DNA of 64,000 nucleotides from positions 186,001 through 250,000 of the IMG/VR virus record IMGVR_UViG_3300034012_003212. One strand, given 5' to 3'. This document shows positions 10,946 through 25,275 of this stretch, piece by piece. Position 1 is the stretch's first letter; every line of letters begins with the position of its first letter. Made by a program: the position numbers and the translations under genes. The notes beneath the pieces were generated by a model, which did no database searches, was not told the origin of the DNA, and saw only the letters and a program-made list of their open reading frames with translations.

Positions 10946-11002
10946 TCAAAAATAATATTTTTTGTGACGCTGAAAAAATAATTTTCGGTTAAACGTTGTT
11001 AA
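10946..11002 (-). promoter_or_regulatory. 57-bp conserved early-promoter-like module, copy 4
   Basis: Gap-free alignment to other copies. Confidence 0.7.
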
Positions 11003-11098: not shown

Positions 11099-11395
11099 TT
11101 AACCTCGAAGGATGGTGATGCGTCCCTTTGATGCGGTGATTGTGGCAGCTGATTCGTCTATCGGCCCGACTGTGGATTCATGGAGCCTGATTGATCCATC
11201 GAGCTCCACTGTGTATGTTGCTATGATCTTCTGTTTCGCCGGAGGATTCTGGGTCATCACGAGTTCATCGAACCCGTTCTTCCCGTATGTGACATAGACC
11301 GTGTCACGGGGGAAAATTCCACAAGCGCGCAGGACTATAGACCAGATGCGAACCCTCCTCCTGCTACATTTTGATATGCCAGTCGTGTTTACCAT
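11099..11395 (-). CDS. hypothetical protein, possible AbrB/MraZ-like fold
   Basis: RVRIWSIVLRACGIFPRDTVYV and TVELDGSIRL segments; overlaps the stop of the last minus-strand LRR gene. Confidence 0.45.
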   Translation of the reverse strand: MVNTTGISKCSRRRVRIWSIVLRACGIFPRDTVYVTYGKNGFDELVMTQNPPAKQKIIATYTVELDGSIRLHESTVGPIDESAATITASKGRITILRG

Positions 11396-11784
11396 TCAGT
11401 GTACTTCAACTTGTGCTTCAGGTGCTTAGGAATCACACCGGGCACATGCACACGGCCATAGAACCCTGTGTCCGAATCATAAGAGATCTCTTCTCCCGTA
11501 TGAAGGTCATCAGGCAGCTTCTTGATCCCTGAGCATCTACTAAGATGCACACCTCCTCTAACTATGAGTCCATCAGGCAGCTTCGTGAGGCCCTTGCAAT
11601 CCCATAGACTCAAATACCCATTCACCTTGAGTCCATCAGGCAGCTTCGTGATCCCTGTGCAATAATAGAGACGCAGATCGCCATTCACCTTGACAACCTC
11701 AAGTGTTCCAAATGAATCCAAAGCCTCCTGGGAACACCTTCGAAGTTCCACCCTCGTTTCTTCTTCTACATTTATTTCTATCAT
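11389..11784 (-). CDS. capped LRR protein, 3 repeats
   Basis: CSQEALDS N-cap, 21-aa LxLxxCxGLxxLPxxLxVxG repeats, TGF..PGVIP C-cap. Confidence 0.9.
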   Translation of the reverse strand: MIEINVEEETRVELRRCSQEALDSFGTLEVVKVNGDLRLYYCTGITKLPDGLKVNGYLSLWDCKGLTKLPDGLIVRGGVHLSRCSGIKKLPDDLHTGEEISYDSDTGFYGRVHVPGVIPKHLKHKLKYTEW

Positions 11785-11809
11785 ATTCAGTTTCTATTTT
11801 GGAATCCCT

Positions 11810-12325
11810 TTACACCATCCTCAACTTGTGCTTCAGCCTCTCGGGGATCACACCGGGCTCGTCCTCATGGCCAGAGAACCCTGTCTCTGAATTATAATAT
11901 ATTCTTCCTTCCACCTGAAGATCTTCAGGCAGCTTCGTGATCCCTGAGCAACCATAGAGACTCATCCCGCCATTCACCTTGAGATCAACAGGCAGCTCCG
12001 TGAGTCCTGTGCAATAATCGAGATTCAATTCCCTATTCACCATGAGGCCATCAGGCAGCTTCGTGATCCCTGTGCAATAATTGAGAAACAAATACATATT
12101 CACCATCAGGCCCTCAGGCAGACTCGCGAGTCCTGTGCAATTTCTGAGACTCAAATACCCATTCACCTTGAGATCATCAGGAAGCTTCTTGAGTCCTGCA
12201 CAATAATAGAGACTCAGATCCCCATTCACCTTAAGGGCCCTGAGGGACCCAAATGAATCTAAAGCTTCCTGGGAACACTTCCTGAGGTGTACCCTCGTTT
12301 CTAGTTTTACTTCTATTTCTATCAT
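11810..12325 (-). CDS. capped LRR protein, 5 repeats
   Basis: Same caps and 21-aa repeats. Confidence 0.9.
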   Translation of the reverse strand: MIEIEVKLETRVHLRKCSQEALDSFGSLRALKVNGDLSLYYCAGLKKLPDDLKVNGYLSLRNCTGLASLPEGLMVNMYLFLNYCTGITKLPDGLMVNRELNLDYCTGLTELPVDLKVNGGMSLYGCSGITKLPEDLQVEGRIYYNSETGFSGHEDEPGVIPERLKHKLRMV

Positions 12326-12345
12326 ATTCAGTTTTTATTTTGGAA

Positions 12346-12801
12346 TCAATCCCATTTCTTCAATTTGTGCTTCAGGCCCTCAGGGATCACTCCAGGTTCA
12401 TCCTCGTGGCCAGAGAACCCTGTGTCCGAATCATACAAGATGTTTTCTTCCACATGAATGCCCTCAGGCAGCTTCGTGATCCCTGTGCAACCATAAAGAA
12501 TCATACCCCCTTGCACATGGAGTCCATCGGGCAGCTTCGTGATCCCTGTGCAACCATAGAGATCCAGATGGATTCTAACCTTAAGATCTTTGGGCAGCTT
12601 CGTGAGCCCCACGCACCAACGTAGATTCAATTGCCCATTCACCTTGAGTCCATCGGGCAGCCTTGTGAGCCCTGAACAATTCCTAAAAATCAAATACCGA
12701 TCCACCTTGACGGCCTCAAGGGACCCAAATGAATCCAAAGCCTCTTGGGAACAATACTCAAGGTCCACCTTCGTTTCTAGTTTTACTTCTATTTCTATCA
12801 T
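12346..12801 (-). CDS. capped LRR protein, 4 repeats
   Basis: Same architecture; close paralog of 19152..19607. Confidence 0.9.
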   Translation of the reverse strand: MIEIEVKLETKVDLEYCSQEALDSFGSLEAVKVDRYLIFRNCSGLTRLPDGLKVNGQLNLRWCVGLTKLPKDLKVRIHLDLYGCTGITKLPDGLHVQGGMILYGCTGITKLPEGIHVEENILYDSDTGFSGHEDEPGVIPEGLKHKLKKWD

Positions 12802-12826
12802 ATTCAGTTTCTATTTTGGAATCCCT

Positions 12827-13222
12827 TTACACCATCCTCAATTTGTGCTTCAGCCTCTCGGGGATCACACCAGGTTCATCCTCGTGGCCGTAGAACCCTG
12901 TTTCTGAACCATAAAAGATCTTTTCTCCCATATGAAGGTCATCAGGCAGCTTCGTGAGTCCTGTACAGCCATTAAGATGCAGATACCCTCCCACAATGAG
13001 ACCATTAGGAAGTCTTGCGATCCCTGTGCAGTCAATAAGATTCAAATACCCATCCACCCTGAGACCCTCAGGAAGCCTCGTGAGTCCTGTGCACATAAAG
13101 AGATCCAAATCCCCATTCACCCTGACGGACTCAAGGGACCCAAATGAATCCAAAGCCTCCTGGGAACAATACTCAAGGCGCACCCTCGTTTCTACTTGTA
13201 TCTTTATCTTCTTCTTTCTCAT
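12827..13222 (-). CDS. capped LRR protein, 3 repeats
   Basis: Same architecture, MRKKKIK start variant. Confidence 0.9.
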   Translation of the reverse strand: MRKKKIKIQVETRVRLEYCSQEALDSFGSLESVRVNGDLDLFMCTGLTRLPEGLRVDGYLNLIDCTGIARLPNGLIVGGYLHLNGCTGLTKLPDDLHMGEKIFYGSETGFYGHEDEPGVIPERLKHKLRMV

Positions 13223-13248
13223 GTCTTGTTTCTATTTTGGAATCACAA

Positions 13249-13650
13249 CTACCACATCTTCAACTTGTCCCGTAGGTGGTCAGGGATCACACCAGGCTCA
13301 TCCTTATGTTTAAAGAACCCTGTGTGTGAGTTATACCATATCTTTGCACCTACAGTGAGACCCTCAGGCAGCTTCTTGATCCCTTTGCAATATGAGAGAT
13401 TCAGAATTTCTCCTACTATGAGATCTCTAGGAATCTCTGTCGTTGTATCACGTAGAATCAGACCCTCTTTCACCCTGAGATCTCTAGGAAGCTCTTTGAG
13501 CCCTACACAACCAGCGAGATTCAGGTACCCATTCACCCTGAGACCCTCTATCCTTCTTAAGGAGTTCAAGGCCTGCCTAGAACACTCCATTAGAGACACA
13601 ATAGTAAGCTCAGGTACTTGTATTTTTCCATTTATTTCTGTCATGCTCAT
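13249..13650 (-). CDS. capped LRR protein, 3 repeats (diverged)
   Basis: Same architecture, more diverged framework. Confidence 0.88.
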   Translation of the reverse strand: MSMTEINGKIQVPELTIVSLMECSRQALNSLRRIEGLRVNGYLNLAGCVGLKELPRDLRVKEGLILRDTTTEIPRDLIVGEILNLSYCKGIKKLPEGLTVGAKIWYNSHTGFFKHKDEPGVIPDHLRDKLKMW

Positions 13651-13671
13651 GTTTTATTTATTTTTTATTTA

Positions 13672-14244
13672 TTAATGCCATCTCTTCAACCTTTCCTTCA
13701 GATGGTTAGGGATCACTCCCCGCTTGTCCTTACTTTTAGAGAACCCTGTGACTGAGTTATACCAGATCTTTCCTACCACCTGGAGATCTTCAGGCAGCTT
13801 AGTGATCCCTTCACAACCGCGTAGATCCAGATCCTTTCTAACTATGAGGTCATCAGGAAGCTCCGTGAGCCCTGTGCAATTGCATAGATCCAGATCCTTT
13901 CTAACTATGAGGTCATTAGGAAGCTCCGTGAGCCCTTCACAATTACTGAGTGTTAGGCTCCCTCCTACAACAAGACCCTCAGGCAACTCTGTGAGCCCTG
14001 TGCAATCTTCTAGATCCAGTCTCTCTCCTACAACAAGACCCTCAGGCAGCTCTGTGAGCCCTGCACAGTCTTGGAAAAACAGACTCCCACTCACCTTTAG
14101 ATCATCAGGCAGCCCTGTGCAGCTGACGAGACCTATATTCCCTTTCACCCTTAGAGTTCCGATCTTCCTTAAGGAGTCAATAGCCTCACGAGAACAACTT
14201 CCGGCATTCACTTTCGTGTAATCTTCTACATTTATTGTTACCAT
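13672..14244 (-). CDS. capped LRR protein, 6 repeats
   Basis: Same architecture with internal repeat duplications. Confidence 0.9.
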   Translation of the reverse strand: MVTINVEDYTKVNAGSCSREAIDSLRKIGTLRVKGNIGLVSCTGLPDDLKVSGSLFFQDCAGLTELPEGLVVGERLDLEDCTGLTELPEGLVVGGSLTLSNCEGLTELPNDLIVRKDLDLCNCTGLTELPDDLIVRKDLDLRGCEGITKLPEDLQVVGKIWYNSVTGFSKSKDKRGVIPNHLKERLKRWH

Positions 14245-14269
14245 ATTCAGTTTCTATTTTGGAATCCCT

Positions 14270-14659
14270 TTAATATTTCCTCAACTTGCACTTCAGGTGC
14301 TTAGGAATCACACCGGGCACATGCACACGGATATAGAACCCTGTGTCTGAATTATAATATATAACTCCTATCAGATGAAGATCTTTAGGCAGCTTCGTGA
14401 TCCCTGTGCAATTTCTGAGGTTCAGAAGCCCTCCCACGGTGAGGCCATCAGGCAGCTTCTTGAGTCCTGCACAATAATAGAGACTCAGGTTCCCTCCCAC
14501 AGTAAGGCCATCAGGCAGCTTCGTGAGGCCTGTGCAACCCACCAAATACAAACCCCCATTCACCTTAGGGGACTCAAGGGACCCAAATGAATCCAAAGCC
14601 TCTTTGGAACACTCTCTAAGGACCACTAACGTTTCTTTTCTTACCTTTATTTCTATCAT
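14270..14659 (-). CDS. capped LRR protein, 3 repeats (mosaic)
   Basis: Each repeat matches a different plus-array gene. Confidence 0.9.
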   Translation of the reverse strand: MIEIKVRKETLVVLRECSKEALDSFGSLESPKVNGGLYLVGCTGLTKLPDGLTVGGNLSLYYCAGLKKLPDGLTVGGLLNLRNCTGITKLPKDLHLIGVIYYNSDTGFYIRVHVPGVIPKHLKCKLRKY

Positions 14660-14681
14660 ATTCAGTTTCTATTTTGGAATC

Positions 14682-15140
14682 TTATTTATATTTCTTCAAC
14701 TTGTGTTTCAGTCTGTCAGGGATCACACCGGGCACATGCTCATGGCCATAGAACCCTGTCAATCCATTATAGTAAATTGTTTCACCCACATGAAGGTCAT
14801 CAGGCAGCTTAGTGATCCCTGAGCAACCATAGAGAAACAAATACCCCACCATGAGGTCATCAGGCAGCTCCGTGAGCCCTGTGCAGCCTACTAGATTCAA
14901 ATACCCATTCACCATGAGATACACGGGCAATTTTTTGAGCCCCTTGCGGCCACTAATATCCAAATCCCCATTCACCCTGAGGCCCCCAGACAGCTTCGTG
15001 AGCCCCTTGCAATCATAGAGACTCAAATGCCCATTCACCTTGAGGGCGTCAATCCTTCCTAAGGAGTCAATAGCCTCCTGAGAACAGCCCCTAAGGTTCA
15101 CTGTTGTTTCTTCTTCTACATTTATTTCTATCATATTCAC
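14682..15140 (-). CDS. capped LRR protein, 4 repeats
   Basis: Same architecture. Confidence 0.9.
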   Translation of the reverse strand: MNMIEINVEEETTVNLRGCSQEAIDSLGRIDALKVNGHLSLYDCKGLTKLSGGLRVNGDLDISGRKGLKKLPVYLMVNGYLNLVGCTGLTELPDDLMVGYLFLYGCSGITKLPDDLHVGETIYYNGLTGFYGHEHVPGVIPDRLKHKLKKYK

Positions 15141-15159
15141 TTTATATTTTGGAATCCCT

Positions 15160-15744
15160 TTACACCATCCTCAACTTGTGCTTCAGCCTCTCGGGGATCA
15201 CACCAGGTTCATGCTCATGGTCATAGAACCCCGTGTATGAATTATACCAGATGACTCCATCTACATTAAGATCATCAGGCAGCTTAGTGATCCCCTTGCA
15301 ATCATAGAGATCCAAATCCCCATTCACCTTGAGTCCATCAGGCAGCTTAGTGATCCCCTTGCAATCATAGAGACTCAAATACCCATTCACCTTGAGACCG
15401 TCAGGCAGCCCTGTGAGCCTTATGCAATGATTGAGAGCCAAATCCCCATTCACCATAAGATCATCAGGCAGCTTCGTGATCCCTGTGCAACCATAGAGAT
15501 CCAGATGCCTTCCAACCTTAAGATCTTTGGGCAGCTTCGTGAGCCCTGTGCAACCACGAAGACTCAAATACCCAGCCACCATGAGATCATCAGGCAGCTT
15601 CTTTATCCCTGTGTGTTTCCATAGACCCAGATCCCCATTCACCTTGACAACCTCAAGGGACCCAAATGAATCCAAAGCCTCTTGGGAACACCTTCCAAGG
15701 TTCACTATTGTTTTTTCTTGTATCTTTATCTTCTTCTTTCTCAT
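15160..15744 (-). CDS. capped LRR protein, 6 repeats
   Basis: Same architecture; first LRR gene of minus array. Confidence 0.9.
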   Translation of the reverse strand: MRKKKIKIQEKTIVNLGRCSQEALDSFGSLEVVKVNGDLGLWKHTGIKKLPDDLMVAGYLSLRGCTGLTKLPKDLKVGRHLDLYGCTGITKLPDDLMVNGDLALNHCIRLTGLPDGLKVNGYLSLYDCKGITKLPDGLKVNGDLDLYDCKGITKLPDDLNVDGVIWYNSYTGFYDHEHEPGVIPERLKHKLRMV

Positions 15745-15780: not shown

Positions 15781-15945
15781 CTACACAAAATACCAGTGTG
15801 ATCGTGCAGCTTCTTCGTATTCTTCTTCGTCCTCTTCATCCTCGTCTTCGTAGTCCTCTTCGTACTCATCAGAATCATCAGGAGGAAAGAACCACGGGGC
15901 GGTGGGCCTTACGAACACTGCGAACTTTGTCTCGGGGTCTTTCAT
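15781..15945 (-). CDS. 54-aa highly acidic peptide heading the minus LRR operon
   Basis: MKDPETKF...DDSDEYEEDYEDEDEEDEEEYEE...HWYFV; GATATATA box 5 nt before ATG. Confidence 0.7.
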   Translation of the reverse strand: MKDPETKFAVFVRPTAPWFFPPDDSDEYEEDYEDEDEEDEEEYEEAARSHWYFV

Positions 15946-15950: not shown

Positions 15951-15958
15951 TATATATC
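15951..15958 (-). promoter_or_regulatory. putative late promoter GATATATA (minus LRR array)
   Basis: GATATATA-AAACC-ATG, same 5-nt spacing as at 45298 and 57921. Confidence 0.6.
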
Positions 15959-16055
15959 ACGCGGGGCGTGGTGTTACATTGTGCTACAGGGAGGCTGGGG
16001 TGGAAGAGAGGGCCCCAGGGGGAACGCGCGCCAGGATTGACCAGGTGACTCGAAA

Positions 16056-16080
16056 GGGAAAATGGGTGGGGTAACATGGG
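16056..16080 (+). other. canonical G-quadruplex motif
   Basis: GGG-AAAAT-GGG-T-GGGG-TAACAT-GGG fits G3N1-7 x4. Confidence 0.6.
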
Positions 16081-16198
16081 TATGATGAGTTTCATTAGAC
16101 CTGGGTGGAACAGTAGTGTCAGAAAATGAACAGGGGTAAAGGGTCGGGGGTTTTTTAAAAAAACATTTATATTGTATCAACCTCATCCGCTTTCCGCT

Positions 16199-16347
16199 CT
16201 CCTGGGCAAAAAGTGCCCTGGTTGTGCCCATTCACATATCACCCTCATGGGCAAAACGTTCCGTGGCTGCGCCTTTTTGTATACCGTACCCTCCTGGGCA
16301 AAAAGTTCTATGGCCCGGGCGAGTCCACTTACTGTGCCCTCCTGGGC
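16199..16347 (+). repeat. four regularly spaced CTCCTGGGC(AAAAAGT) repeats
   Basis: Copies at 16199, 16244, 16291, 16339; copies 1 and 3 identical over 16 nt. Confidence 0.65.
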
Positions 16348-16877
16348 CCTCAGTCCTGGTCCTTGGTCCTTGGTCCTGATTGTCTTGAGGGCCTGTGCGA
16401 GTGTGTCCTGACAGAACAGAGGGGTGGAACTGATTCATCTACTCTGTTCTCAGGTTTCCTTGTCTTTTTTCTTCTTTCTCTCTGTGGGTGTGGGTGGATC
16501 TTCTGGATCCTGTGCCCCCTTTTGATCTTCTCTCTCTCTCTTTCTTTCCTTTCTTCCAGGCTGGGTTGGGTGTGAGTGTGAGTGTGAGAGGAGGGTCATT
16601 CCTTTTTCTGGTCCTTCTGGTTGTTGGTCGGTGGGCACACAGAGAGAGTGGGGGGTTCTGGCATCTTGGAGGGTTTTTTTTTGGAGGGGGAGGGGGAGGG
16701 GGGTGTGAGTAAAAATGTTATTTTTGTTATTTTTGTTAGTTGGAGTCTTCTTCCCGGGTCTGATCATCAGAGGGAAGATGTTGGGCCGTTGTGGTTATGA
16801 AGAGAAGCTGATCCGTCATCGGGCACAGGGGCGATGATTTTAATGGCAGAAGGTTCCATCAGGGGTGGTTTATTTTT

Positions 16878-16885
16878 GATATATA
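16878..16885 (+). promoter_or_regulatory. putative late promoter GATATATA (plus LRR array)
   Basis: GATATATACAGC 12-mer identical to that upstream of the portal gene. Confidence 0.6.
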
Positions 16886-16941
16886 CAGCCCACCGTGGAT
16901 TATGAATAGACGGCGCGCGCTAGGTGAAATAAAAACTGAAT

Positions 16942-17460
16942 ATGATAGAAATAAATGTAAGAAAAGAAACGTTAGTGTACCTTAGAGAGTGTTCCAAAGA
17001 GGCTTTGGATTCATTTGGGTCCCTTGAGGCCCTTAAGGTGAATGGGCATTTGGATCTCTATTATTGCACTGGGCTCAAGAAGCTGCCTGATGGCCTAATG
17101 GTGAATGGGGATCTGAATCTCTATGGCTGCACAGGACTCACGAAGCTGCCTGATGATCTTAAGGTTGGAAAGCATCTGATTCTATGGAGTTGCCCGGGGC
17201 TCACAGAGCTGCCTGATGATCTCAAGGTGAATGGGAGTCTGAATATATGGAATTGCACGGGCCTCACGAAGCTGCCTGAAGGGCTCAAGGTTGAAGGGAC
17301 TCTGGATCTATGGTATTGCACAGGGATCACGAAGCTGCCTGAAGATCTTCAGGTGGAAGGATTCATATATTATAATGAAGGCACAGGGTTCTATGGACAT
17401 ATGGATGAGCCTGGCGTTATCCCTAACCACCTGAAGAACAAGTTGAAGAAACGTAAATAA
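16942..17460 (+). CDS. capped LRR protein, 5 repeats
   Basis: N-cap, 21-aa LRRs, C-cap. Confidence 0.9.
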   Translation: MIEINVRKETLVYLRECSKEALDSFGSLEALKVNGHLDLYYCTGLKKLPDGLMVNGDLNLYGCTGLTKLPDDLKVGKHLILWSCPGLTELPDDLKVNGSLNIWNCTGLTKLPEGLKVEGTLDLWYCTGITKLPEDLQVEGFIYYNEGTGFYGHMDEPGVIPNHLKNKLKKRK

Positions 17461-17476
17461 GACTTTAAAATAGAAA

Positions 17477-17878
17477 GTGAATATGATGGAAATAGAGGTA
17501 GATGTAGAAACGAGTGTGGTCCTCCGAAGGTGTTCCCAAGAGGCTTTGGATTCATTTGGGTCTCTTGAGGCCGTCAAGGTTAATGGGGATTTGGGTCTGC
17601 ACCGTTGCACAGGGCTCACGGAGCTGCCTGATGATCTCAAGGTGGATGGGTATTTGAGTCTATATGGTTGCCCGGGGATCAAGAAGCTTCCTGGGGGCCT
17701 CAGTGTGAATGGGGACCTGGATCTAGGTCATTGTCCAGGGATCAAGGATCTTCCTGAAGATCTTCAGGTGGAAGGAAGCATATATTATAATTCAAAGACA
17801 GGGTTCTCTGGCCATGAGGACGAGCCTGGCGTGATCCCTGATCATCTGAAGAACAAATTGGAAAAATATGGTAGATGA
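17477..17878 (+). CDS. capped LRR protein, 3 repeats
   Basis: N-cap, 21-aa LRRs, C-cap. Confidence 0.9.
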   Translation: MNMMEIEVDVETSVVLRRCSQEALDSFGSLEAVKVNGDLGLHRCTGLTELPDDLKVDGYLSLYGCPGIKKLPGGLSVNGDLDLGHCPGIKDLPEDLQVEGSIYYNSKTGFSGHEDEPGVIPDHLKNKLEKYGR

Positions 17879-17900
17879 GATTCCAAAATAGAAACTGAAC

Positions 17901-18290
17901 ATGACAGAAATAAAGGTAAAAGAAAAAACACTAGTGAAACTTAGTTGGTGTTCTCAGGAGGCTTTGGATTCATTTGGGTCCCTTGAGGCCCTTAAGGTGA
18001 ATGGGGGGCTGAGTCTCTATTATTGTGTAGGCATCAAGAAGCTGCCTGATGATCTCAAGGTGAATGGATATTTGAATCTCACCAATTGCGCAGGGCTCAC
18101 AGAGCTGCCTGATGGACTCCATGTGAAAGTTAGTGTGATTCTTTATGGTTGCTTAGGGATCACGAAGCTGCCTGATGACCTTCATGTGGGAGAAGAGATC
18201 TGGTATAATTCATACACGGGGTTCTACGGCCGTGTGCATGTGCCCGGTGTGATCCCTAAGCACCTGAAGCGCAAGTTGAAGAAATTTTAA
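17901..18290 (+). CDS. capped LRR protein, 3 repeats
   Basis: N-cap, 21-aa LRRs, C-cap. Confidence 0.9.
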   Translation: MTEIKVKEKTLVKLSWCSQEALDSFGSLEALKVNGGLSLYYCVGIKKLPDDLKVNGYLNLTNCAGLTELPDGLHVKVSVILYGCLGITKLPDDLHVGEEIWYNSYTGFYGRVHVPGVIPKHLKRKLKKF

Positions 18291-18314
18291 GAGATTCCAA
18301 AATAGAAACTGAAT

Positions 18315-18734
18315 ATGAGAAAGAAGAAGATAAAGATACAAGAGAAAACAATAGTGCACCTCTGGAATTGTTCCCAAGAGGCTTTGGATTCATTTGGGTC
18401 CCTTGAGGCCGTCAAGGTGAATGGCGATCTGCGTCTCAATTATTGCACAGGGATCACGAAGCTGCCTGATGGACTCAAGGTGAATGGGTATTTGAGTCTT
18501 ATTGGCTGCACAGGACTCACGAAGTTGCCTGATGGCCTCAAGGTGGATGGGAATTTGAATCTCTTTATGTGTACAGGACTCGCGAAGCTGCCTGAAGATC
18601 TTCAGGTGGAAGGAGTCATATATTATGATTCAGACACGGGGTTCTCTGGCCATGAGCATGAACCTGGTGTGATCCCTACAAGGCTGAAGCACAAGTTGAA
18701 GAAATGGGAGATGAGATTCCAAAATAGAAACTGA
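18315..18734 (+). CDS. capped LRR protein, 3 repeats, read-through tail
   Basis: GAG where siblings have TAG extends ORF through spacer (EMRFQNRN). Confidence 0.9.
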   Translation: MRKKKIKIQEKTIVHLWNCSQEALDSFGSLEAVKVNGDLRLNYCTGITKLPDGLKVNGYLSLIGCTGLTKLPDGLKVDGNLNLFMCTGLAKLPEDLQVEGVIYYDSDTGFSGHEHEPGVIPTRLKHKLKKWEMRFQNRN

Positions 18735-18736
18735 AT

Positions 18737-19126
18737 ATGATAGAAATAGAGGTAAAAGAAAAAACGACAGTGAACCTTCAATGGTGTTCCCAAGAGGCTT
18801 TGGATTCATTTGGGTCCCTTGAGGCCGTCAAGGTGAATGGGGATCTGGGTCTATGGGATTGCAGGGGCCTCACTAAGCTGCCTGATGGACTCAAGGTGAA
18901 TGGGTATTTGAATCTTATTGACTGCACAGGGATCGCAAGACTTCCTAATGGTCTCATTGTGGGAGGGTATCTGCAACTTTATGGTTGCACAGGGATCACG
19001 AAGCTTCCTGATGACCTTCATGTGGAAGAAAAGATCTTGTATGATTCGGACACAGGGTTCTCTGGCCATGAGGACGAGCCCGGTGTGATTCCTAAGCACC
19101 TGAAGCGCAAGTTGAGGAAATATTAA
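18737..19126 (+). CDS. capped LRR protein, 3 repeats
   Basis: N-cap, 21-aa LRRs, C-cap. Confidence 0.9.
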   Translation: MIEIEVKEKTTVNLQWCSQEALDSFGSLEAVKVNGDLGLWDCRGLTKLPDGLKVNGYLNLIDCTGIARLPNGLIVGGYLQLYGCTGITKLPDDLHVEEKILYDSDTGFSGHEDEPGVIPKHLKRKLRKY

Positions 19127-19151
19127 AGGGATTCCAAAATAGAAACTGAAT

Positions 19152-19607
19152 ATGATAGAAATAGAAGTAAAACTAGAAACGAAGGTGGACCTTAGTGAGT
19201 GTTCCCAAGAGGCTTTGGATTCATTTGGGTCCCTTGAGGCCGTCAAGGTGGATCGGTATTTGATTTTTAGGAATTGTCCAGGGCTCACGAAGCTGCCTGA
19301 TGGACTCAAGGTGAATGGGCAATTGAATCTACGTTGGTGCACAGGGCTCACGAAGCTGCCCAAAGATCTTAAGGTTGGAAGCCATCTGGATCTCTATGGC
19401 TGCACAGGACTCACGAAGCTGCCCGATGGACTCCATGTGCAAGGGGGTGTGATTCTTTATGGTTGCTTAGGGATCACGAAGCTGCCTGATGACCTTCATG
19501 TGGGAGAAGAGATCTATTATGATTCGGACACAGGGTTCTATGGCCGTGTGCATGTGCCCGGTGTGATCCCTGAGAGGCTGAAGCACAAATTGAAGAAATG
19601 GGATTGA
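19152..19607 (+). CDS. capped LRR protein, 4 repeats
   Basis: Close paralog of 12346..12801. Confidence 0.9.
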   Translation: MIEIEVKLETKVDLSECSQEALDSFGSLEAVKVDRYLIFRNCPGLTKLPDGLKVNGQLNLRWCTGLTKLPKDLKVGSHLDLYGCTGLTKLPDGLHVQGGVILYGCLGITKLPDDLHVGEEIYYDSDTGFYGRVHVPGVIPERLKHKLKKWD

Positions 19608-19627
19608 TTCCAAAATAGAAACTGAAT

Positions 19628-19954
19628 ATGATGGAAATAGAGGTAAGAAAAGAAACGACGGTGGACCTTGAGTATTGTTCCCAAGAGGCTTTGGATTCAT
19701 TTGGGTCCCTTGAGGCTGTTGGGGTGAATGGGCATTTGTTTCTTGATGGATGCCGAGGGCTCACGGAGCTGCCTGATGGCCTCAAGGTGGATGGGCATTT
19801 GTTTCTCAATTATTGCACAGGGATCACGAAGCTGCCTGAAGATCTTCAGGTGGAAGGATTCATATATTATAATTCAGAGATAGGGTTCTATGGCCATGAG
19901 GATGAACCTGGCGTGATTCCTAAGCACCTGAAGCGCAAGTTGAGGAAATATTAA
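19628..19954 (+). CDS. capped LRR protein, 2 repeats
   Basis: Minimal unit, 108 aa. Confidence 0.9.
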   Translation: MMEIEVRKETTVDLEYCSQEALDSFGSLEAVGVNGHLFLDGCRGLTELPDGLKVDGHLFLNYCTGITKLPEDLQVEGFIYYNSEIGFYGHEDEPGVIPKHLKRKLRKY

Positions 19955-19979
19955 AGGGATTCCAAAATAGAAACTGAAT

Positions 19980-20399
19980 ATGATAGAAATAAAGGTAAGA
20001 AAAGAAACGACGGTGCATCTCTGGAATTGTTCCCAAGAGGCTTTGGATTCATTTGGGTCCCTTGAGGCCCTCAAGGTGAATGGCGATCTGAATCTCTTTA
20101 GGTGCAAAAGACTCACGAAGCTGCCTGACGTCCTCAAGGTGAATGGGGGGCTGAGTCTCAGAAATTGCGCAGGACTCGCGAGTCTGCCTGATGGCCTCAA
20201 GGTGGATGGGCATTTGGATCTCTATGGTTGCTCAGGGATCACGAAGCTGCCTGGCGACCTTCATACGGGAGAAGAGATCTGGTATAATTCAGAGACAGGG
20301 TTCTATGGTCATGAGGATGAGCCCGGTGTGATCCCTGAGAGGCTGAAGCACAAGTTGAAGAAATGGGAGATGAGATTCCAAAATAGAAACCGAATATGA
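19980..20399 (+). CDS. capped LRR protein, 3 repeats, read-through tail
   Basis: Ends EMRFQNRNRI overlapping next start. Confidence 0.9.
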   Translation: MIEIKVRKETTVHLWNCSQEALDSFGSLEALKVNGDLNLFRCKRLTKLPDVLKVNGGLSLRNCAGLASLPDGLKVDGHLDLYGCSGITKLPGDLHTGEEIWYNSETGFYGHEDEPGVIPERLKHKLKKWEMRFQNRNRI

Positions 20400-20725
20400 T
20401 AGAAATAGAGCTACAAAGAGACGCGACAGTGGACCTTATGAAGTGTTCCCAAGAGGCTTTGGATTCATTTGGGTCCCTTGAGGCCGTCAAGGTTAATGGG
20501 GATTTGAATCTGCACCGTTGCACAGGACTCACGAAGCTGCCTGAGGGCCTAATGGTGAATAAGGATTTGTTTCTCAATTATTGCACAGGGATCACGAAGC
20601 TGCCTGAAGATCTTAATGTATATGGAGACATCTGGTATAATTATTGCACAGGGTTCTGTGGCCACGAGGATGAACCTGGAGTGATCCCTGAGAGCCTGAA
20701 GCACAATTTATATAAATTCTCCTGA
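20396..20725 (+). CDS. capped LRR protein, 2 repeats
   Basis: Minimal unit, 109 aa. Confidence 0.9.
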   Translation: MIEIELQRDATVDLMKCSQEALDSFGSLEAVKVNGDLNLHRCTGLTKLPEGLMVNKDLFLNYCTGITKLPEDLNVYGDIWYNYCTGFCGHEDEPGVIPESLKHNLYKFS

Positions 20726-20773
20726 AGTGCAATTTATATAAATTCTAGAGAGATTCCAAAATAGAAACTGAAT

Positions 20774-21163
20774 ATGATAGAAATAAAGGTAAAAGAAAAA
20801 ACGACAGTGTACCTTAGATATTGTTCCCAAGAGGCTTTGGATTCATTTGGGTCCATTGAGTCCCCTAAGGTGGATGGGGATCTGGTTCTATGGCAACACA
20901 CAGGGATAAAGAAGCTGCCTGATGATCTCAGGGTGGCTGGGTATTTGAGTATCAGAAATTGCACAGGGCTCACGGAGCTGCCTGATGATCTCAAGGTGAA
21001 TGGCGGAATGAGTCTCATTGGTTGCTCAGGGATCACGAAGCTACCTGAGGGCATTCATGTGGAAGGAGAGATCTTGTATAATTCAAAGACGGGGTTCTGT
21101 GGCCATGAGGATGAGCCCGGTGTGATCCCTGACAGACTGAAACACAAATTGGAAGAATTGTAG
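20774..21163 (+). CDS. capped LRR protein, 3 repeats
   Basis: N-cap, 21-aa LRRs, C-cap. Confidence 0.9.
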   Translation: MIEIKVKEKTTVYLRYCSQEALDSFGSIESPKVDGDLVLWQHTGIKKLPDDLRVAGYLSIRNCTGLTELPDDLKVNGGMSLIGCSGITKLPEGIHVEGEILYNSKTGFCGHEDEPGVIPDRLKHKLEEL

Positions 21164-21189
21164 ATGAGATTCCAAAATAAAAACAGAAC

Positions 21190-21702
21190 ATGATAGAAAT
21201 AAAGGTGAGAAAAATAACGAGGGTAGTCCTCCGCAGGTGTTCCCAGGAGGCTTTGGATTCATTTGGGTCCCTCAGAGCCCTCAAGGTGAATGGGGATCTG
21301 GATCTAACATGGCACGAAGGGCTCATAGAGTTGCCCGAGGGACTCATAGTTGCAGGGGATCTGGATCTATGGGGTTGTACACTGCTCACAGAGCTGCCTG
21401 AGGGTCTCACTGTAGGAGGGAGTATGGATCTAGACGGTTGCATAGGGCTCACAGAGCTGCCTGAGGGTCTCACTGTAGGAGGGAGTATGGATCTAGAAGG
21501 TTGCATAGGGCTCACAGAGCTGCCTGAGGGTCTCACAGTTGCAGGAAATCTCGATCTCCGAGGTTGTGAAGGAATAACAATGCTGCCCGAAGATCTTCAT
21601 CTAGGAGGAGGCATCTGGTATAACTCAGAGACGGGGTTCTGTGATCAAGAGCATGAACCTGGTGTGATCCCTAAGCACCTGAAGGGTAAGTTGTGGAAAT
21701 AA
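21190..21702 (+). CDS. capped LRR protein, 5 repeats
   Basis: Contains near-perfect 63-bp tandem duplication. Confidence 0.9.
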   Translation: MIEIKVRKITRVVLRRCSQEALDSFGSLRALKVNGDLDLTWHEGLIELPEGLIVAGDLDLWGCTLLTELPEGLTVGGSMDLDGCIGLTELPEGLTVGGSMDLEGCIGLTELPEGLTVAGNLDLRGCEGITMLPEDLHLGGGIWYNSETGFCDQEHEPGVIPKHLKGKLWK

Positions 21703-21724
21703 GATAATAAAATAGAAACTGGGT

Positions 21725-22177
21725 ATGATAGAAATAAAGGTAAGAAAAGAAACGAGGGTAGTCCTCCGCAGGTGTTCCCAGGAGGCTTTGGATTCATTTG
21801 GGTCCCTCAGAGCCCTCAAGGTGAATGGGGATCTGGATCTAATGTATTGCGCAGGGCACATTAAGTTTCCTGATAATCTCATAGTTGCAGGGGATCTGGA
21901 TCTATGGAGTTGCCTAGGACTCACTGAGCTGCCTGATGGCCTCAATGTGGATGGGAGTCTGGATCTATATAATTGCGCAAAACTCACAAGACTTCCTGAT
22001 GGCCTTGTGGTAATGGGGCGGTTGGATCTTAGGTATTGTGCAGGAATAACAATGCTGCCTGAAGATCTTCAGGTGGAAGGAATCATATATTATAATTCAG
22101 AGACAGGGTTCTATGGTCATGAGGATGAGCTTGGTGTGATCCCTGATCATTTGAAGAACAAGTTGATGAAATTTTAA
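21725..22177 (+). CDS. capped LRR protein, 4 repeats
   Basis: N-cap, 21-aa LRRs, C-cap. Confidence 0.9.
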   Translation: MIEIKVRKETRVVLRRCSQEALDSFGSLRALKVNGDLDLMYCAGHIKFPDNLIVAGDLDLWSCLGLTELPDGLNVDGSLDLYNCAKLTRLPDGLVVMGRLDLRYCAGITMLPEDLQVEGIIYYNSETGFYGHEDELGVIPDHLKNKLMKF

Positions 22178-22201
22178 GAGATTCCAAAATAGAAACTGAA
22201 T

Positions 22202-22594
22202 ATGATAGAAATAAATGTAAGAAAAGAAACGGTAGTGAAACTTTATAAGTGTTCCCAAGAGGCTTTGGATTCATTTGGGTCCCTCAGAGCCCTCAAGGTG
22301 AATGGGGATCTGAGTATATGGCATTGTCCAGGGCTCACGGAGCTGCCTGATGGACTCAAGGTGAATGGGTATTTGTATCTTAATGGATGCACAGGTCTCA
22401 TGAGTCTGCCTGATGGCCTTACTGTGGGAGGGAACCTGAGTCTCTATTATTGCGCAGGACTCAAGAAGCTCCCGAAGGGACTCACAGTTTTTGGTGTCAT
22501 ACGGTATACCTCAGGGACGGGATTCTATGGCCATGAGGATGAGCCTGGGGTGATTCCTGAGGGCCTGAAGCATAAGTTGAAAAAAATGGTTTAA
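22202..22594 (+). CDS. capped LRR protein, 3 repeats
   Basis: N-cap, 21-aa LRRs, C-cap. Confidence 0.9.
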   Translation: MIEINVRKETVVKLYKCSQEALDSFGSLRALKVNGDLSIWHCPGLTELPDGLKVNGYLYLNGCTGLMSLPDGLTVGGNLSLYYCAGLKKLPKGLTVFGVIRYTSGTGFYGHEDEPGVIPEGLKHKLKKMV

Positions 22595-22601
22595 ATAGAA
22601 T

Positions 22602-23129
22602 TTGAATATGATAGAAATAGAGGTAAGAAAAGAAACGAGGGTGGAACTTCGAAGGTGTTCCCAGGAGGCTTTGGATTCATTTGGGTCCCTTGAGGCTGTC
22701 AAGGTGAATGGGGATCTGGGTCTATTGTATTGCACGGGGATCACGAAGCTCCCTGGCGCCGTCAAGGTCACAGGGTCCCTGGATCTTAGGTATTGCACGG
22801 GCCTCACAAAGTTGCCTGATGGTCTAAAGGCGGGAGGCCATCTGTATCTACGGAATTGCACAGGACTCACAGGGCTGCCTGATGATCTTATGGTGAATGG
22901 GGATTTGACTCTCAATCATTGCATAAAGCTCACAGGACTGCCTGATGGTCTCAAGGTGAATGGGTATTTGAGTCTATGGAATTGCACAAGACTCAAAGAG
23001 CTTCCTGATGACCTTCATGTGGGAGAAGAGATCTGGTATAATTCAAAGACAGGATTCTATGGACATATGCACGAGCCTGGTGTGATTCCTGATGCCCTGA
23101 AGCGCAAGTTGAGGAAAAATGGTAGATGA
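22602..23129 (+). CDS. capped LRR protein, 5 repeats
   Basis: N-cap, 21-aa LRRs, C-cap. Confidence 0.9.
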   Translation: MNMIEIEVRKETRVELRRCSQEALDSFGSLEAVKVNGDLGLLYCTGITKLPGAVKVTGSLDLRYCTGLTKLPDGLKAGGHLYLRNCTGLTGLPDDLMVNGDLTLNHCIKLTGLPDGLKVNGYLSLWNCTRLKELPDDLHVGEEIWYNSKTGFYGHMHEPGVIPDALKRKLRKNGR

Positions 23130-23151
23130 GATTCCAAAATAAAAACAGAAC

Positions 23152-23541
23152 ATGATAGAAATAGAGGTAAGAAAAGAAACGAAGATGTACCTTAGTGGGT
23201 GTTCCCAAGAGGCTTTGGATTCATTTGGGTCCCTCAGGGCCCTTAAGGTGAATGGGGATTTGAATCTCCTATTTTGTGTAGGGCCCACGAAGCTGCCCGA
23301 TGGGCTCAAGGTGAATATGGGTTTGAATCTTATTGGCTGCACAGGGCTCACGAAGCTGCCTGATGGACTCACTGTTGGAATGAATTTGTTTCTCTATGGT
23401 TGCTCAGGGATCACGAAGCTGCCTGAAGATCTTCAGGTGGAAGGAAGAATATATTATAATTCAGAGACAGGGTTCTATGGTCATGAGGATGAGCTTGGTG
23501 TGATCCCTGAGAGGCTGAAACACAAGTTGGAAAAATGGTAG
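23152..23541 (+). CDS. capped LRR protein, 3 repeats
   Basis: N-cap, 21-aa LRRs, C-cap. Confidence 0.9.
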   Translation: MIEIEVRKETKMYLSGCSQEALDSFGSLRALKVNGDLNLLFCVGPTKLPDGLKVNMGLNLIGCTGLTKLPDGLTVGMNLFLYGCSGITKLPEDLQVEGRIYYNSETGFYGHEDELGVIPERLKHKLEKW

Positions 23542-23567
23542 ATGAGATTCCAAAATAAAAACTGAAT

Positions 23568-23957
23568 ATGATAGAAATAGATGTAGAAGAAGAAACAATA
23601 GTGGTCCTTAGATATTGTTCCCAAGAGGCTTTGGATTCATTGGGAACGCTTGACGTCCTCAAGGTGAACGGGGGGTTGTTTCTCTATAGTTGCACAGGGC
23701 TCACTGAGCTGCCTGATGATCTTAAGGTGAATGGGAGTCTGAATCTATATAATTCCGAAGAACTCACAAGACTTCCTGATGGCCTTAGGGTAGCGGGGCG
23801 GTTGGATCTTAGGTATTGTGCAGGAATAACAATGCTGCCTGAAGATCTCAATGTAGATGGAGGCATCTGGTATAATTCAGAAACAGGGTTCTTTGACCGT
23901 AAGGATGAACCTGGTGTGATCCCTGATCATTTGAAGAACAAGTTGATGAAATTTTAA
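23568..23957 (+). CDS. capped LRR protein, 3 repeats
   Basis: N-cap, 21-aa LRRs, C-cap. Confidence 0.9.
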   Translation: MIEIDVEEETIVVLRYCSQEALDSLGTLDVLKVNGGLFLYSCTGLTELPDDLKVNGSLNLYNSEELTRLPDGLRVAGRLDLRYCAGITMLPEDLNVDGGIWYNSETGFFDRKDEPGVIPDHLKNKLMKF

Positions 23958-23981
23958 GAGATTCCAAAATAGAAACTGAAT

Positions 23982-24371
23982 ATGATAGAAATAAATGTAA
24001 AACCAAGCACGCATGTGCAACTTCGATGGTGTTCCCAGGCGGCTTTAGATTCTCTGGGAATGCTTGACACACTCAGGGTGGATGGGGATTTAAATTTCTA
24101 TACTTGCAGAGGACTTACAGGGCTATCTGATGATATAAATGTGAAAGGGACTCTGAATCTCAGTTTCTGCACAGGGCTTACAGAGCTTCCTGATGGTCTC
24201 ACTGTGAAATGGGGCCTGGCTCTTTTTGGTTGCAAAGGGATCACGAAGCTGCCTGAAGATCTTCAGGTGGAAGGAGTCATATATTATAATGAAGGCACAG
24301 GGTTCTATGGACATATGGATGAGCCTGGCGTGATCCCTAACCACCTGAAGAACAAGTTGAAGAAATTTTAA
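23982..24371 (+). CDS. capped LRR protein, 3 repeats
   Basis: N-cap, 21-aa LRRs, C-cap. Confidence 0.9.
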   Translation: MIEINVKPSTHVQLRWCSQAALDSLGMLDTLRVDGDLNFYTCRGLTGLSDDINVKGTLNLSFCTGLTELPDGLTVKWGLALFGCKGITKLPEDLQVEGVIYYNEGTGFYGHMDEPGVIPNHLKNKLKKF

Positions 24372-24395
24372 GAGATTCCAAAATAGAAACTAGAC

Positions 24396-24851: not shown

Positions 24852-24873
24852 GATAATAAAATATGAACTGGGT

Positions 24874-25275
24874 ATGAGAAAGAAGAAGATAAAGATAAAG
24901 GTAAGAAAAGAAACGAAGGTGTACCTTAGTGGGTGTTCTCAGGAAGCTTTGGATTCATTTGGGTCCCTCAACGCCCTCAAGGTGGATGGGTATCTGGGTC
25001 TATGGTATTGCGCAGGGCTCAAGAAGCTGCCTGATGGACTCATGGTGGGCGGGGTTTTGAATCTCGGTTATTGCATAGGACTCACGAGGCTGCCCGATGG
25101 ACTCATTGTCGCAGGTGGGTTGAATCTCGGTCATTGCATAGGACTCACGAGTCTGCCTGATGATCTTAATGTGGGAGAAGTCATCTGGTATAATCTAAAA
25201 ACAGGGTTCTGTGGCCATGAGCATGAACCTGGCGTGATCCCTGATCATCTGAAGAACAAATTGCACAAACATTAA
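24874..25275 (+). CDS. capped LRR protein, 3 repeats
   Basis: N-cap, 21-aa LRRs, C-cap. Confidence 0.9.
   Translation: MRKKKIKIKVRKETKVYLSGCSQEALDSFGSLNALKVDGYLGLWYCAGLKKLPDGLMVGGVLNLGYCIGLTRLPDGLIVAGGLNLGHCIGLTSLPDDLNVGEVIWYNLKTGFCGHEHEPGVIPDHLKNKLHKH

What the first reader, a model, noticed from the sequence alone, without database searches (positions are those of the whole stretch)
15951..16889. Both LRR arrays appear to be driven outward from late-type GATATATA promoters
Seen: GATATATA at 15951-15958 (-) and 16878-16885 (+) face away from each other. The plus copy shares the 12-mer GATATATACAGC with the box upstream of the portal gene. Established: T4 late genes use a single -10 box (TATAAATA) read by gp55, and a gp55-like gene is present here. 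Inference: the LRR repertoire is expressed late with virion genes. That would suit packaging into the capsid for delivery to the next host, or blocking late-acting defences or superinfection, rather than classical early anti-defence.
Basis: partly seen in the sequence, partly recalled or inferred. Interest (0 to 1): 0.65.

Follow-up and report, generated by a model that had tools for sequence, protein, structure and literature searches.

The report
Late-type promoters heading phage LRR arrays
Two copies of this uncultured T4-like jumbo phage's own late-gene promoter box sit back to back at the ends of a 0.9-kb non-coding spacer and point into two large arrays of small leucine-rich-repeat genes. 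The phage probably makes this binder repertoire together with its virion and lysis proteins, but no expression data could be obtained.

Summary
GATATATA lies at 15951-15958 (-) and 16878-16885 (+), facing outward, and the plus copy shares GATATATACAGC with the portal box.

It is not chance. In the 260.7-kb genome, [GA]ATATATA is a strongly oriented, intergenic motif (GATATATA: 24 intergenic versus 0.7 expected). It sits 4-62 nt before start codons of the portal, tail sheath, protease/scaffold plus capsid operon, endolysin and neck genes. Relatives carry NATATATA, NATAAATA or TATAAATA before their portal genes, and a short gp55-like gene is present.

A second promoter class, of Bacteroidota host type (T-run plus TAnnTTTG), drives DNA-metabolism genes. 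It is absent in canonical form from the spacer.

Refinements:
- The minus box sits 5 nt before a 54-aa acidic ORF (leaderless spacing) that precedes the nine minus LRR genes.
- The plus box gives a leader of about 50 nt.
- LRR genes are about 22 nt apart, with a conserved A-rich spacer and no internal perfect box, so they are probably polycistronic.
- Dispersed LRR genes also lie behind boxes.
- An unrelated T4-like phage has an LRR array behind an exact TATAAATA.

Late timing and any role for the proteins (packaging, late counter-defence) remain inference.

The parts
15951..15958 (-). Late-type box GATATATA, minus copy. By the T4 rule (box at -13 to -6) the predicted start is at 15945, the A of the ATG, which would give a leaderless mRNA.
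15781..15945 (-). 54-aa strongly acidic ORF (pI about 4), the first cistron behind the minus box. It has no family match and is identical in six assemblies.
11389..15744 (-). Minus array of nine small LRR genes (129-194 aa). Spacers are about 22 nt, with consensus GATTCCAAAATAGAAACTGAATATG.
15959..16877 (.). Non-coding divergent spacer between the two boxes. Its centre (16135-16590) is variable between strains, with 1-nt and 13-nt indels, and every SNP in its ORFs is non-synonymous.
16184..16351 (+). Three to four direct repeats of 45-48 nt with core CCTCCTGGGC plus an A-run. The same GC-rich core is repeated five times upstream of another LRR cluster, at genome 182969-183050.
16683..16702 (+). 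(GGAGGG)3.3 microsatellite lying between a T9 run (16674-16682) and the TATTTTTG boxes.
16716..16738 (+). (TGTTATTTT)2.6 repeat holding two host-type -7 boxes, TATTTTTG, at 16719-16726 and 16728-16735. The upstream T-run is 36 nt away instead of about 18, and the early-promoter matrix scores are -35 and -33 bits.
16871..16878 (+). Third TATTTTTG, overlapping the first base of the plus late-type box. It may simply be the T-rich stretch that precedes about half of all boxes.
16878..16885 (+). Late-type box GATATATA, plus copy. The predicted start is near 16891-16892, giving a leader of about 50 nt. A 27-codon ORF starts 17 nt after the box, at 16903.
16942..38941 (+). Plus array of about 55 LRR genes. 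The proximal 34 or so (to 32259) are closely related; the distal ones diverge progressively.
37866..37873 (+). AATATATA box 24 nt before the divergent LRR gene 37898-38542. It is the only perfect box on the sense strand inside the plus array.
51642..51649 (-). GATATATA box 23 nt before the portal gene 49924-51618 (phrog_213). It shares the 12-mer with the plus copy.
53082..53432 (-). gp55-like late sigma factor in a short form (116 aa), single copy. It is syntenic with the portal gene in relatives.
56372..56379 (-). GATATATA box 25 nt before the 831-aa gene 53851-56346.
57921..57928 (-). GATATATA box 5 nt before the 503-aa gene 56404-57915 (leaderless spacing).
10947..10954 (-). Example of the contrasting early-type promoter (T-run, 16-18 nt, TATTTTTG). 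Others in the window start at 534, 4095, 5252, 8269 and 10230, all on the minus strand.

Best explanation
The two GATATATA boxes are working members of this phage's late promoter class, [GA]ATATATA. This is a single A/T-rich -10-type element with no -35 element, most likely read by host RNA polymerase core carrying the phage's gp55-like sigma factor. The boxes mark the outer ends of a 0.9-kb non-coding divergent control region.

The minus box starts a probably leaderless mRNA at the ATG of a 54-aa acidic protein and reads on through nine LRR genes. The plus box starts an mRNA with a leader of about 50 nt that reads into the array of about 55 LRR genes. Within the arrays each cistron is translated from a conserved A-rich, Shine-Dalgarno-free spacer.

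The LRR repertoire is therefore wired to the same programme as head, tail and lysis genes.

Shown: motif class, positions, gene associations, conservation in relatives, presence of the gp55-like gene, and absence of a canonical early promoter. Inferred: which factor reads the box, the start sites, the timing, and polycistronic read-through.
For: Motif statistics and orientation.

46 [GA]ATATATA sites lie 4-62 nt before ORFs, 12 of them at 4-7 nt.

Genes driven by the box:
- portal, tail sheath, head maturation protease, endolysin, head closure and an adaptor-like protein;
- the capsid gene lies 14 nt behind the box-headed protease gene.

Early-type promoters instead drive a DNA-binding protein, the clamp loader, topoisomerase II, dCMP deaminase and a BRCT protein.

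A box of the form ATA[TA]A[TA]A lies within 60 nt of the portal start in 16 of 22 distinct relatives, against 1.26 expected. One of these is an exact TATAAATA.

The gp55-like gene is present here and in 4 of 5 relatives' records.

The spacer's TATTTTTG boxes score -33 to -38 bits on the early-promoter matrix, while genuine sites score 28-53.

LRR gene spacers are about 22 nt. There is no perfect box inside 16942-37800 and no convincing terminator.

Other LRR family members sit behind boxes at genome 136730, 181564 and 182560 and at window 37866.

An independent T4-like phage has six LRR paralogues 8 nt behind an exact TATAAATA, paired back to back with one serving a Sod-gp13 operon.

The T4 rule for box position and the variability of its first base come from PMC1524935.
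Against: - There are no transcript data.
- The box differs from TATAAATA at two positions.
- gp33 and gp45 homologues were not found, although the control genomes did not ring either.
- The gp55-like protein is short (116 aa) and matches T4 gp55 itself only weakly (E 0.36).
- Some box-driven genes are not structural: an ATPase and a DNA-binding protein.
- Three host-type -7 boxes lie upstream of the plus array.
- One promoter for about 21 kb and 50 or more cistrons is long.
- Single LRR homologues in a lambdoid phage and in another phage sit in early or replication modules.
Confidence: 0.68

Rival explanations
1. Dual or earlier control. The plus array is also, or mainly, transcribed by unmodified host polymerase from the TATTTTTG -7 boxes at 16719, 16728 and 16871, so LRR proteins would already be made early. 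The late-type box would only extend expression.
For: Three TAnnTTTG boxes lie within 220 nt upstream of the plus array, where about 0.3 are expected. The sequence AAAAATGTTATTTTTG at 16709-16726 is identical to part of the genuine early promoter at 4095. A T9 run would sit at the canonical 18-nt distance if the (GGAGGG)3 repeat were absent. LRR homologues in Edno5 and in L048 lie in early modules.
Against: The full early-promoter matrix scores are -33 to -38 bits, against 28-53 for about 19 genuine sites. No such box faces the minus array. The 16871 box may be only the T-rich stretch that precedes half of all late boxes. In the other T4-like phage, the array's 34-nt spacer has room for nothing but the two TATAAATA boxes.
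Confidence: 0.15
2. The box class is real, but the arrays are not single operons. Each LRR gene, or many of them, has a weak promoter of its own in the conserved spacer (AAAATAGA or AAAATATA 8 nt before the ATG, or TATATAAA 31 nt before). The head boxes would then contribute only part of the expression.
For: The spacer is nearly invariant across about 40 genes. A dispersed, 58%-identical copy at genome 26221-27183 keeps it. One-mismatch variants occur at 15143, 20735, 25677, 26095, 30894 and 32270. TATATAAA is the portal box in some relatives.
Against: The common spacer has two mismatches at positions that are invariant in all 46 sites. An A-rich stretch 2-12 nt before the start codon is what Bacteroidota ribosome-binding regions look like (PMC2483708), which explains the conservation without a promoter.
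Confidence: 0.12
3. The [GA]ATATATA class is a phage promoter but is not late (it is middle or constitutive), or it is read by something other than the gp55-like protein.
For: Timing is inferred only by analogy. Several driven genes have unknown or non-structural functions. gp33 and gp45 were not detected.
Against: The class is tied to capsid, portal, sheath, neck and endolysin genes and is segregated from the DNA-metabolism promoters. It grades into TATAAATA in relatives that also carry the gp55-like gene.
Confidence: 0.08
4. The two boxes at this locus are chance A/T-rich octamers without function.
For: Octamers are short, and the shared 12-mer is not significant by itself.
Against: The expected number of oriented copies within 60 nt of a given start codon is about 0.004. 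Both copies lie at the extreme outer ends of the spacer, pointing outward. The minus copy has the modal 5-nt spacing.
Confidence: 0.02

Closest known systems
Phage T4 late promoters (TATAAATA at -13 to -6, read by gp55 with gp33 and the gp45 clamp)
   Same: A single A/T-rich octamer without a -35 element lies directly upstream of orthologues of T4 late genes. A gp55-like gene is present. Relatives show intermediate forms up to an exact TATAAATA.
   Different: The consensus is [GA]ATATATA, with T instead of A at position 5. The gp55-like protein is about 116 aa against 185 aa. gp33 and gp45 were not detected. The host appears to be of Bacteroidota type, and many sites have leaderless spacing.
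Divergent late-promoter consensus of Aeromonas phage Aeh1 (CTAAATA) and NATAAATA of other T4-like phages
   Same: These are precedents for a T4-type late box that has drifted together with a diverged gp55, and for a free first position (PMC1524935).
   Different: Those phages keep AAATA at the 3' end. Here the alternating ATATATA core is invariant in the sites used.
Bacteroidota housekeeping promoters (-7 TAnnTTTG, -33 TTTG)
   Same: The phage's other promoter class, and the three boxes at 16719, 16728 and 16871, carry the -7 motif.
   Different: The boxes in the LRR spacer lack the T-run or -33 element at the spacing found in all genuine sites of this genome.
T4 internal proteins and Alt (late-made, capsid-packaged, injected counter-defence proteins)
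   Same: Accessory proteins expressed from late promoters.
   Different: No conserved (L/I)xE cleavage motif at about residue 10 was seen by inspection of the LRR N-termini. There are about 65 paralogues rather than a few proteins. Packaging is untested.
Small bacterial and plant LRR solenoids (Vibrio flagellar rod-binding FlrP, PDB 8z5u; LRRs of RPP1, Roq1, ADR1 and NRG1)
   Same: They share the 21-residue unit LxLxxCxGLTxLPxxLxVxG. The predicted structure is a confident solenoid (pLDDT 92). Variation is concentrated on the strand face.
   Different: The phage proteins have their own conserved N- and C-terminal caps, no signal peptide, and form a tandem family of about 65 genes.
LRR array of another T4-like phage (L064-L066, with relatives at 72 IMG/VR loci)
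   Same: Tandem small LRR paralogues with the same 21-residue unit. The array head sits 8 nt behind a late box that is paired back to back with a second late box.
   Different: The box there is the canonical TATAAATA, the spacer is 34 nt rather than 0.9 kb, the caps differ and there are six genes. Across that AT-rich family the box test was not discriminating.

Membership tests
T4-type (gp55-dependent) late promoter | Single conserved A/T-rich octamer at about -10, with no conserved -35 element | tested here: met
   The count matrix of 46 sites shows an invariant ATATATA core, G or A at the first position, about 50% T at the four bases upstream, and nothing conserved further upstream.
T4-type (gp55-dependent) late promoter | Consensus TATAAATA | tested here: not met
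   The local consensus is [GA]ATATATA. TATAAATA occurs only 12 times in the genome. Relatives bridge the two forms, and the first position is known to vary.
T4-type (gp55-dependent) late promoter | Lies 5' of orthologues of T4 late genes and not of replication genes | tested here: met
   Portal, sheath, protease plus capsid operon, neck genes and endolysin have the box. Clamp loader, topoisomerase II and dCMP deaminase have the other class.
T4-type (gp55-dependent) late promoter | Phage encodes gp55 | tested here: met
   53082-53432 (-) matches phrog_234 at E 1e-11 and is single copy. It aligns weakly to T4 gp55 (PDB 7d7c_F). It is conserved beside the portal gene in relatives.
T4-type (gp55-dependent) late promoter | Co-activator gp33 and sliding clamp gp45 present | tested here: inconclusive
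   PF09116 and PF02916 found nothing, but the control genomes did not ring either. gp33 was not searched for with a model.
T4-type (gp55-dependent) late promoter | Transcription starts 6 nt after the box, late in infection, and depends on replication | not testable with these tools
Bacteroidota sigma-A promoter (for the TATTTTTG boxes in the spacer) | -7 TAnnTTTG plus an upstream T-rich or -33 element at the genome's usual 16-18 nt | tested here: not met
   The -7 motif is present three times. The T-run is 36 nt away or absent. Matrix scores are -33 to -38 bits.
Leucine-rich repeat proteins | Tandem LxxLxLxx(N/C)xL units forming a solenoid | tested here: met
   153 units of 21 residues. AlphaFold2 pLDDT 92 and pTM 0.86. 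The top fold and sequence matches are almost all LRR domains. Pfam LRR hits fall below the cut-off.
T4-like capsid-packaged internal proteins | N-terminal capsid-targeting sequence ending in an (L/I)xE protease site | tested here: inconclusive
   By inspection of the alignment, only the MRKKKIKIQE- subset has IxE at residue 10. The common MIEIxVKxET- type does not. The specificity of this phage's protease is unknown.

The most novel reading that the evidence does not exclude
The phage carries a late-expressed library of about 65 diversified LRR binders. Their hypervariable strand-face positions are rich in Tyr, Trp, Asn, Asp and Ser. The library is made with the virion from two divergent polycistronic operons. 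It would be either carried on or in the particle, or deployed against late-acting host systems. It would be governed by a dedicated 0.9-kb control region whose GC-rich repeats (CCTCC(C)TGGG(G)C) recur upstream of another LRR cluster as sites for an unknown regulator.
Probability: 0.2. Interest if true: 0.8.

Novelty: new variant of a known kind. Interest (0 to 1): 0.52.

Why it matters
The analysis gives a usable two-class promoter map for a clade of uncultured T4-like jumbo phages related to huge phages and Lak phages: host-type T-run plus TAnnTTTG promoters, and phage late-type [GA]ATATATA boxes. It shows how the T4 late box has drifted in this clade.

It also places the genome's largest accessory family, about 10% of the DNA, in the late regulon. 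In classical T4-like phages, lineage-specific ORFs are reported to go with early genes (PMC1524935). Late wiring of a diversified binder family therefore narrows the plausible roles to virion-associated, next-host or late-acting functions. It also supplies concrete, testable start sites.

Tried and rejected
- **Chance occurrence:** rejected by shuffles, a Markov model of intergenic DNA and the orientation test.
- **Canonical early promoter in the spacer:** rejected by a 60-nt matrix built from 16 clear sites.
- **Protein-coding ORFs in the spacer** (15974-16231, 16232-16438, 16213-16575, 16450-16767): rejected. A 97%-identical natural variant has 1-nt and 13-nt indels there, and all 11 SNPs that could be scored in these ORFs are non-synonymous. 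The 104-aa extended form of the acidic ORF is disfavoured because the box lies inside it.
- **Known RNA family in 15500-17200:** none found.
- **Structured leader, or a terminator between the acidic ORF and the first LRR gene:** none. Only weak, in-gene terminator-like hairpins occur in the arrays.
- **Sigma-70-type promoters:** at background level.
- **GC-skew minimum at the spacer as a replication origin:** not separable from the switch in transcription direction.
- **Close DNA relatives among deposited phages:** none, or low-complexity hits only.
- **This LRR family elsewhere:** absent from ten related phage records, most of them fragments, and from IMG/VR by pattern search.
- **Late box at LRR cluster heads across the second, AT-rich LRR family:** not discriminating. 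ATAAATA occurs at 7 of 44 heads, 8 of 142 internal genes and 39 of 285 other genes.
- **Boxes before the Lak and LR756500 portal genes:** present, but uninformative in such AT-rich DNA.
- **Sliding-clamp Pfam searches:** empty, with silent controls.

Full report
**Setting**

The window is bases 186001-250000 of a 260,658-bp, 41.6% GC virus contig (IMG/VR; linear; CheckV estimate 88% complete; JGI sample 3300034012). It has a T4-like core:
- portal (phrog_213);
- SbcCD-like gp46 and gp47;
- a gp41-type helicase;
- a UvsX-like recombinase;
- a head-completion protein;
- outside the window, a gp23 capsid protein, sheath, prohead protease, clamp loader and topoisomerase II.

The portal protein is closest to uncultured huge phages (41% identity) and to Prevotella Lak phages (36%). 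Leaders are A-rich and lack a Shine-Dalgarno sequence, and one promoter class is of the Bacteroidota type (below). The host is therefore probably a member of the Bacteroidota, which is an inference.

**The observation**

The 12-mer shared with the portal box is real.

The motif is far from random:
- 38 copies in the genome, 27 of them in the 7% that is intergenic;
- 24 within 100 nt upstream of a same-strand gene start, against about 2.5 expected;
- within intergenic DNA alone, 24 copies against 0.71 expected from a composition-matched model;
- in gaps between co-directional genes, 23 sense and 3 antisense.

AATATATA behaves the same way: 12 of its 21 copies lie upstream of genes. The class is therefore [GA]ATATATA. 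The four bases before it are about 50% T, the base after it is almost never T, and nothing is conserved at -35.

The 46 sites lie 4-62 nt before an ORF. Twelve of them lie 4-7 nt before it, with a mode of 5. In T4 the late box spans -13 to -6 (PMC1524935). By that rule a 5-nt gap puts the transcript start on the A of the ATG, which would make the mRNA leaderless. This is an inference.

**What the class drives**

Behind the boxes lie:
- the portal gene, the tail sheath, the head maturation protease (with the capsid gene 14 nt behind it), the endolysin, a head-closure protein and an adaptor-like protein;
- many large proteins of unknown function in the 50-135 kb structural block.

A second class has a sharp architecture: an A/T-run (AAAAAtATTTTTTTc), then 16-18 nt, then TAnnTTTG. 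About 19 sites score 28-53 bits on the matrix. This class precedes a DNA-binding protein, the clamp loader, the topoisomerase II large subunit, dCMP deaminase and a BRCT protein. TAnnTTTG with TTTG is the published Bacteroides and Flavobacterium consensus (PMC2483708).

The two classes are thus separated both by function and by position in the genome. This is the pattern expected of host-read early promoters and phage-read late promoters.

**Link to T4 late transcription**

A single gp55-like gene lies at 53082-53432 (-). It matches phrog_234 ('late sigma transcription factor') at E 1e-11 and aligns weakly to T4 gp55 itself. The same short form (117-134 aa) lies beside the portal gene in 4 of 5 relatives' records searched.

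Upstream of the portal gene, 16 of 22 distinct relatives (42-77% identity) carry ATA[TA]A[TA]A within 60 nt, against 1.26 expected. The forms run from GATATATA and AATATATA through GATAAATA and TATATAAA to an exact TATAAATA. The local box is therefore a drifted T4-type late box. There is precedent in Aeh1 (CTAAATA) and in the free first position of other T4-like phages.

Clamp and co-activator homologues were not detected, but those searches had silent controls and prove nothing.

**The locus itself**

The boxes mark the two ends of a non-coding spacer of 919 nt (15959-16877).

*Minus side.* The box is 5 nt from the ATG of a 54-aa, very acidic ORF (15781-15945) with no family match. An unstructured 36-nt gap follows, and then nine LRR genes.

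*Plus side.* The box is 56 nt from the first LRR start codon. The leader is unstructured (z = +0.7) and ends in the array's conserved A-rich stretch. A 27-codon ORF starts 17 nt after the box, and its reality is unknown.

*The arrays.* LRR genes are separated by about 22 nt of nearly invariant sequence (GATTCCAAAATAGAAACTGAATATG). This leaves no room for separate canonical promoters. There is no perfect box on the sense strand between 16942 and 37800, and no convincing terminator. The conserved spacer fits the A-rich Bacteroidota ribosome-binding region, and a dispersed family member keeps it.

*Other family members.* A perfect AATATATA precedes the divergent member at 37898-38542. Dispersed members elsewhere are also box-headed:
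- genome 136747-137436, with a box 9 nt upstream;
- the cluster at genome 180132-182554, headed by boxes at 182560 and 181564.

*Early-type promoters.* No canonical early promoter exists in the spacer on either strand.

**Caveat on the plus side**

Three host-type -7 boxes (TATTTTTG) lie at 16719, 16728 and 16871. The first shares 16 consecutive bases with a genuine early promoter at 4095. Its T-run is pushed from about 18 nt to 36 nt away by a (GGAGGG)3.3 microsatellite. This could be a decayed or tunable early promoter, so I keep dual control as the main rival.

**Independent support**

The locus is 100% identical in five other assemblies. One 97% variant differs only in the centre of the spacer, where it has frame-breaking indels and only non-synonymous SNPs. 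The centre is therefore non-coding, and the minus box, the acidic ORF and 176 nt upstream are invariant.

A different, 29% GC T4-like phage (L064-L066) has six tandem LRR paralogues with the same 21-residue unit. Their head lies 8 nt behind an exact TATAAATA, which is paired back to back in a 34-nt spacer with another TATAAATA serving a Sod-gp13 operon. That family is widespread, with 72 IMG/VR loci, but its DNA is too AT-rich for a discriminating general test.

By contrast, single LRR homologues in a lambdoid Edwardsiella phage and in another phage sit in early or replication modules.

**The proteins**

There are about 65 paralogues, found as 83 tblastn places and making up about 10% of the genome. 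Each has a conserved N-terminal cap, two to six 21-residue units and a conserved C-terminal cap.

The model is a confident LRR solenoid (pLDDT 92). The nearest folds are plant helper-NLR and RPP1 LRRs, and the nearest solved sequence is the Vibrio flagellar rod-binding protein FlrP.

Variability is concentrated at unit positions 12, 14, 16, 18, 20, 21 and 2, which form the strand face. These positions are rich in Tyr, Trp, Asn, Asp and Ser. pI values range from 4.4 to 9.3. This looks like a diversified binder repertoire, but its targets are unknown.

I saw no general T4-style capsid-targeting or cleavage motif, so the packaging idea is neither supported nor excluded.

**Verdict**

The reading 'late-type promoters drive both arrays' is well supported by sequence evidence but has not been shown by expression data. 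The functional speculation is open.

This is a new variant of a known kind: a drifted T4-type late box, with an unusually large accessory family attached to it. In classical T4-like phages, novel ORFs are reported to go with early genes, which makes the late wiring moderately surprising.

Noticed in passing
window 534-541, 4095-4102, 5252-5259, 8269-8276, 10230-10237, 10947-10954 (all minus strand): Six copies of a sharply defined host-type promoter (A/T-run, 16-18 nt, TAnnTTTG). Four of them (4095, 5252, 10230, 10947) share a near-identical cassette of about 50 nt. They drive the small early-looking genes downstream of the minus LRR array.
   Followed up: yes
window 16184-16351 and L010:2969-3050 (genome 182969-183050): The GC-rich motif CCTCC(C)TGGG(G)C occurs 9 times in the genome. 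Seven copies lie in the two long non-coding regions, 240-480 nt upstream of the GATATATA boxes that head minus-strand LRR clusters. It may be a regulator-binding array.
   Followed up: partly
window 16674-16738: A T9 run, a (GGAGGG)3.3 microsatellite and duplicated TATTTTTG boxes. Without the 18-nt G-rich repeat the spacing would match the canonical early promoter. This could be a decayed promoter or one tuned by repeat length.
   Followed up: partly
genome-wide; in the window 15951, 45298 and 57921 (minus strand): Twelve of the 46 late-type boxes lie 4-7 nt before the ATG, with a mode of 5. By the T4 spacing rule these would give leaderless mRNAs. They include the endolysin gene and the acidic ORF.
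   Followed up: partly
window 11389-38941, LRR units: Within the 21-residue unit, the strand-face positions are hypervariable and rich in Tyr, Trp, Asn, Asp and Ser, while the scaffold positions (C1, L7, P8, L11, V13) are more than 90% conserved. The gene at 12346-12801 (-) is 85% identical to the one at 19152-19607 (+), which implies recent exchange between the two arrays.
   Followed up: partly
window 16135-16590 versus L050: Variation between strains is confined to the centre of the spacer and includes a 13-nt indel in a CT-rich tract. Metagenome assemblies repeatedly break at the array borders, leaving contigs of about 1 kb that hold only the spacer.
   Followed up: yes
window 53082-53432 (-) and 53740-53850: The gp55-like gene is a short form (116 aa) conserved beside the portal gene in relatives. 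A GC-rich hairpin followed by a T-run lies after the 831-aa gene, just upstream of the gp55 operon.
   Followed up: partly
L001:8500-19500 (genome 8.5-19.5 kb, outside the window): A second repeat-rich region with strong GC skew (+0.2) and reiterated ...ACTCCGTG... units. It may be another multigene or repeat-protein family.
   Followed up: no
L064:6001-8679 and loci L067-L138: A second family of small tandem LRR genes, with the same 21-residue unit but different caps, is widespread in large environmental phage contigs. Several loci fall on single 200-270 kb contigs.
   Followed up: partly
window 5968-6942 (+), 7412-7816 (-), 3235-4059 (-): A plus-strand GDP-mannose 4,6-dehydratase-like gene lies among minus-strand early-type genes, alongside a pentapeptide-repeat protein (weak Pfam hit recorded with the contig) and a BRCT-domain protein.
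   Followed up: no
window 16903-16986 (+): A 27-codon basic ORF starts 17 nt after the plus box, which is the commonest box-to-ATG distance. It overlaps the first LRR start codon out of frame and could be a leader ORF or could be noise.
   Followed up: no
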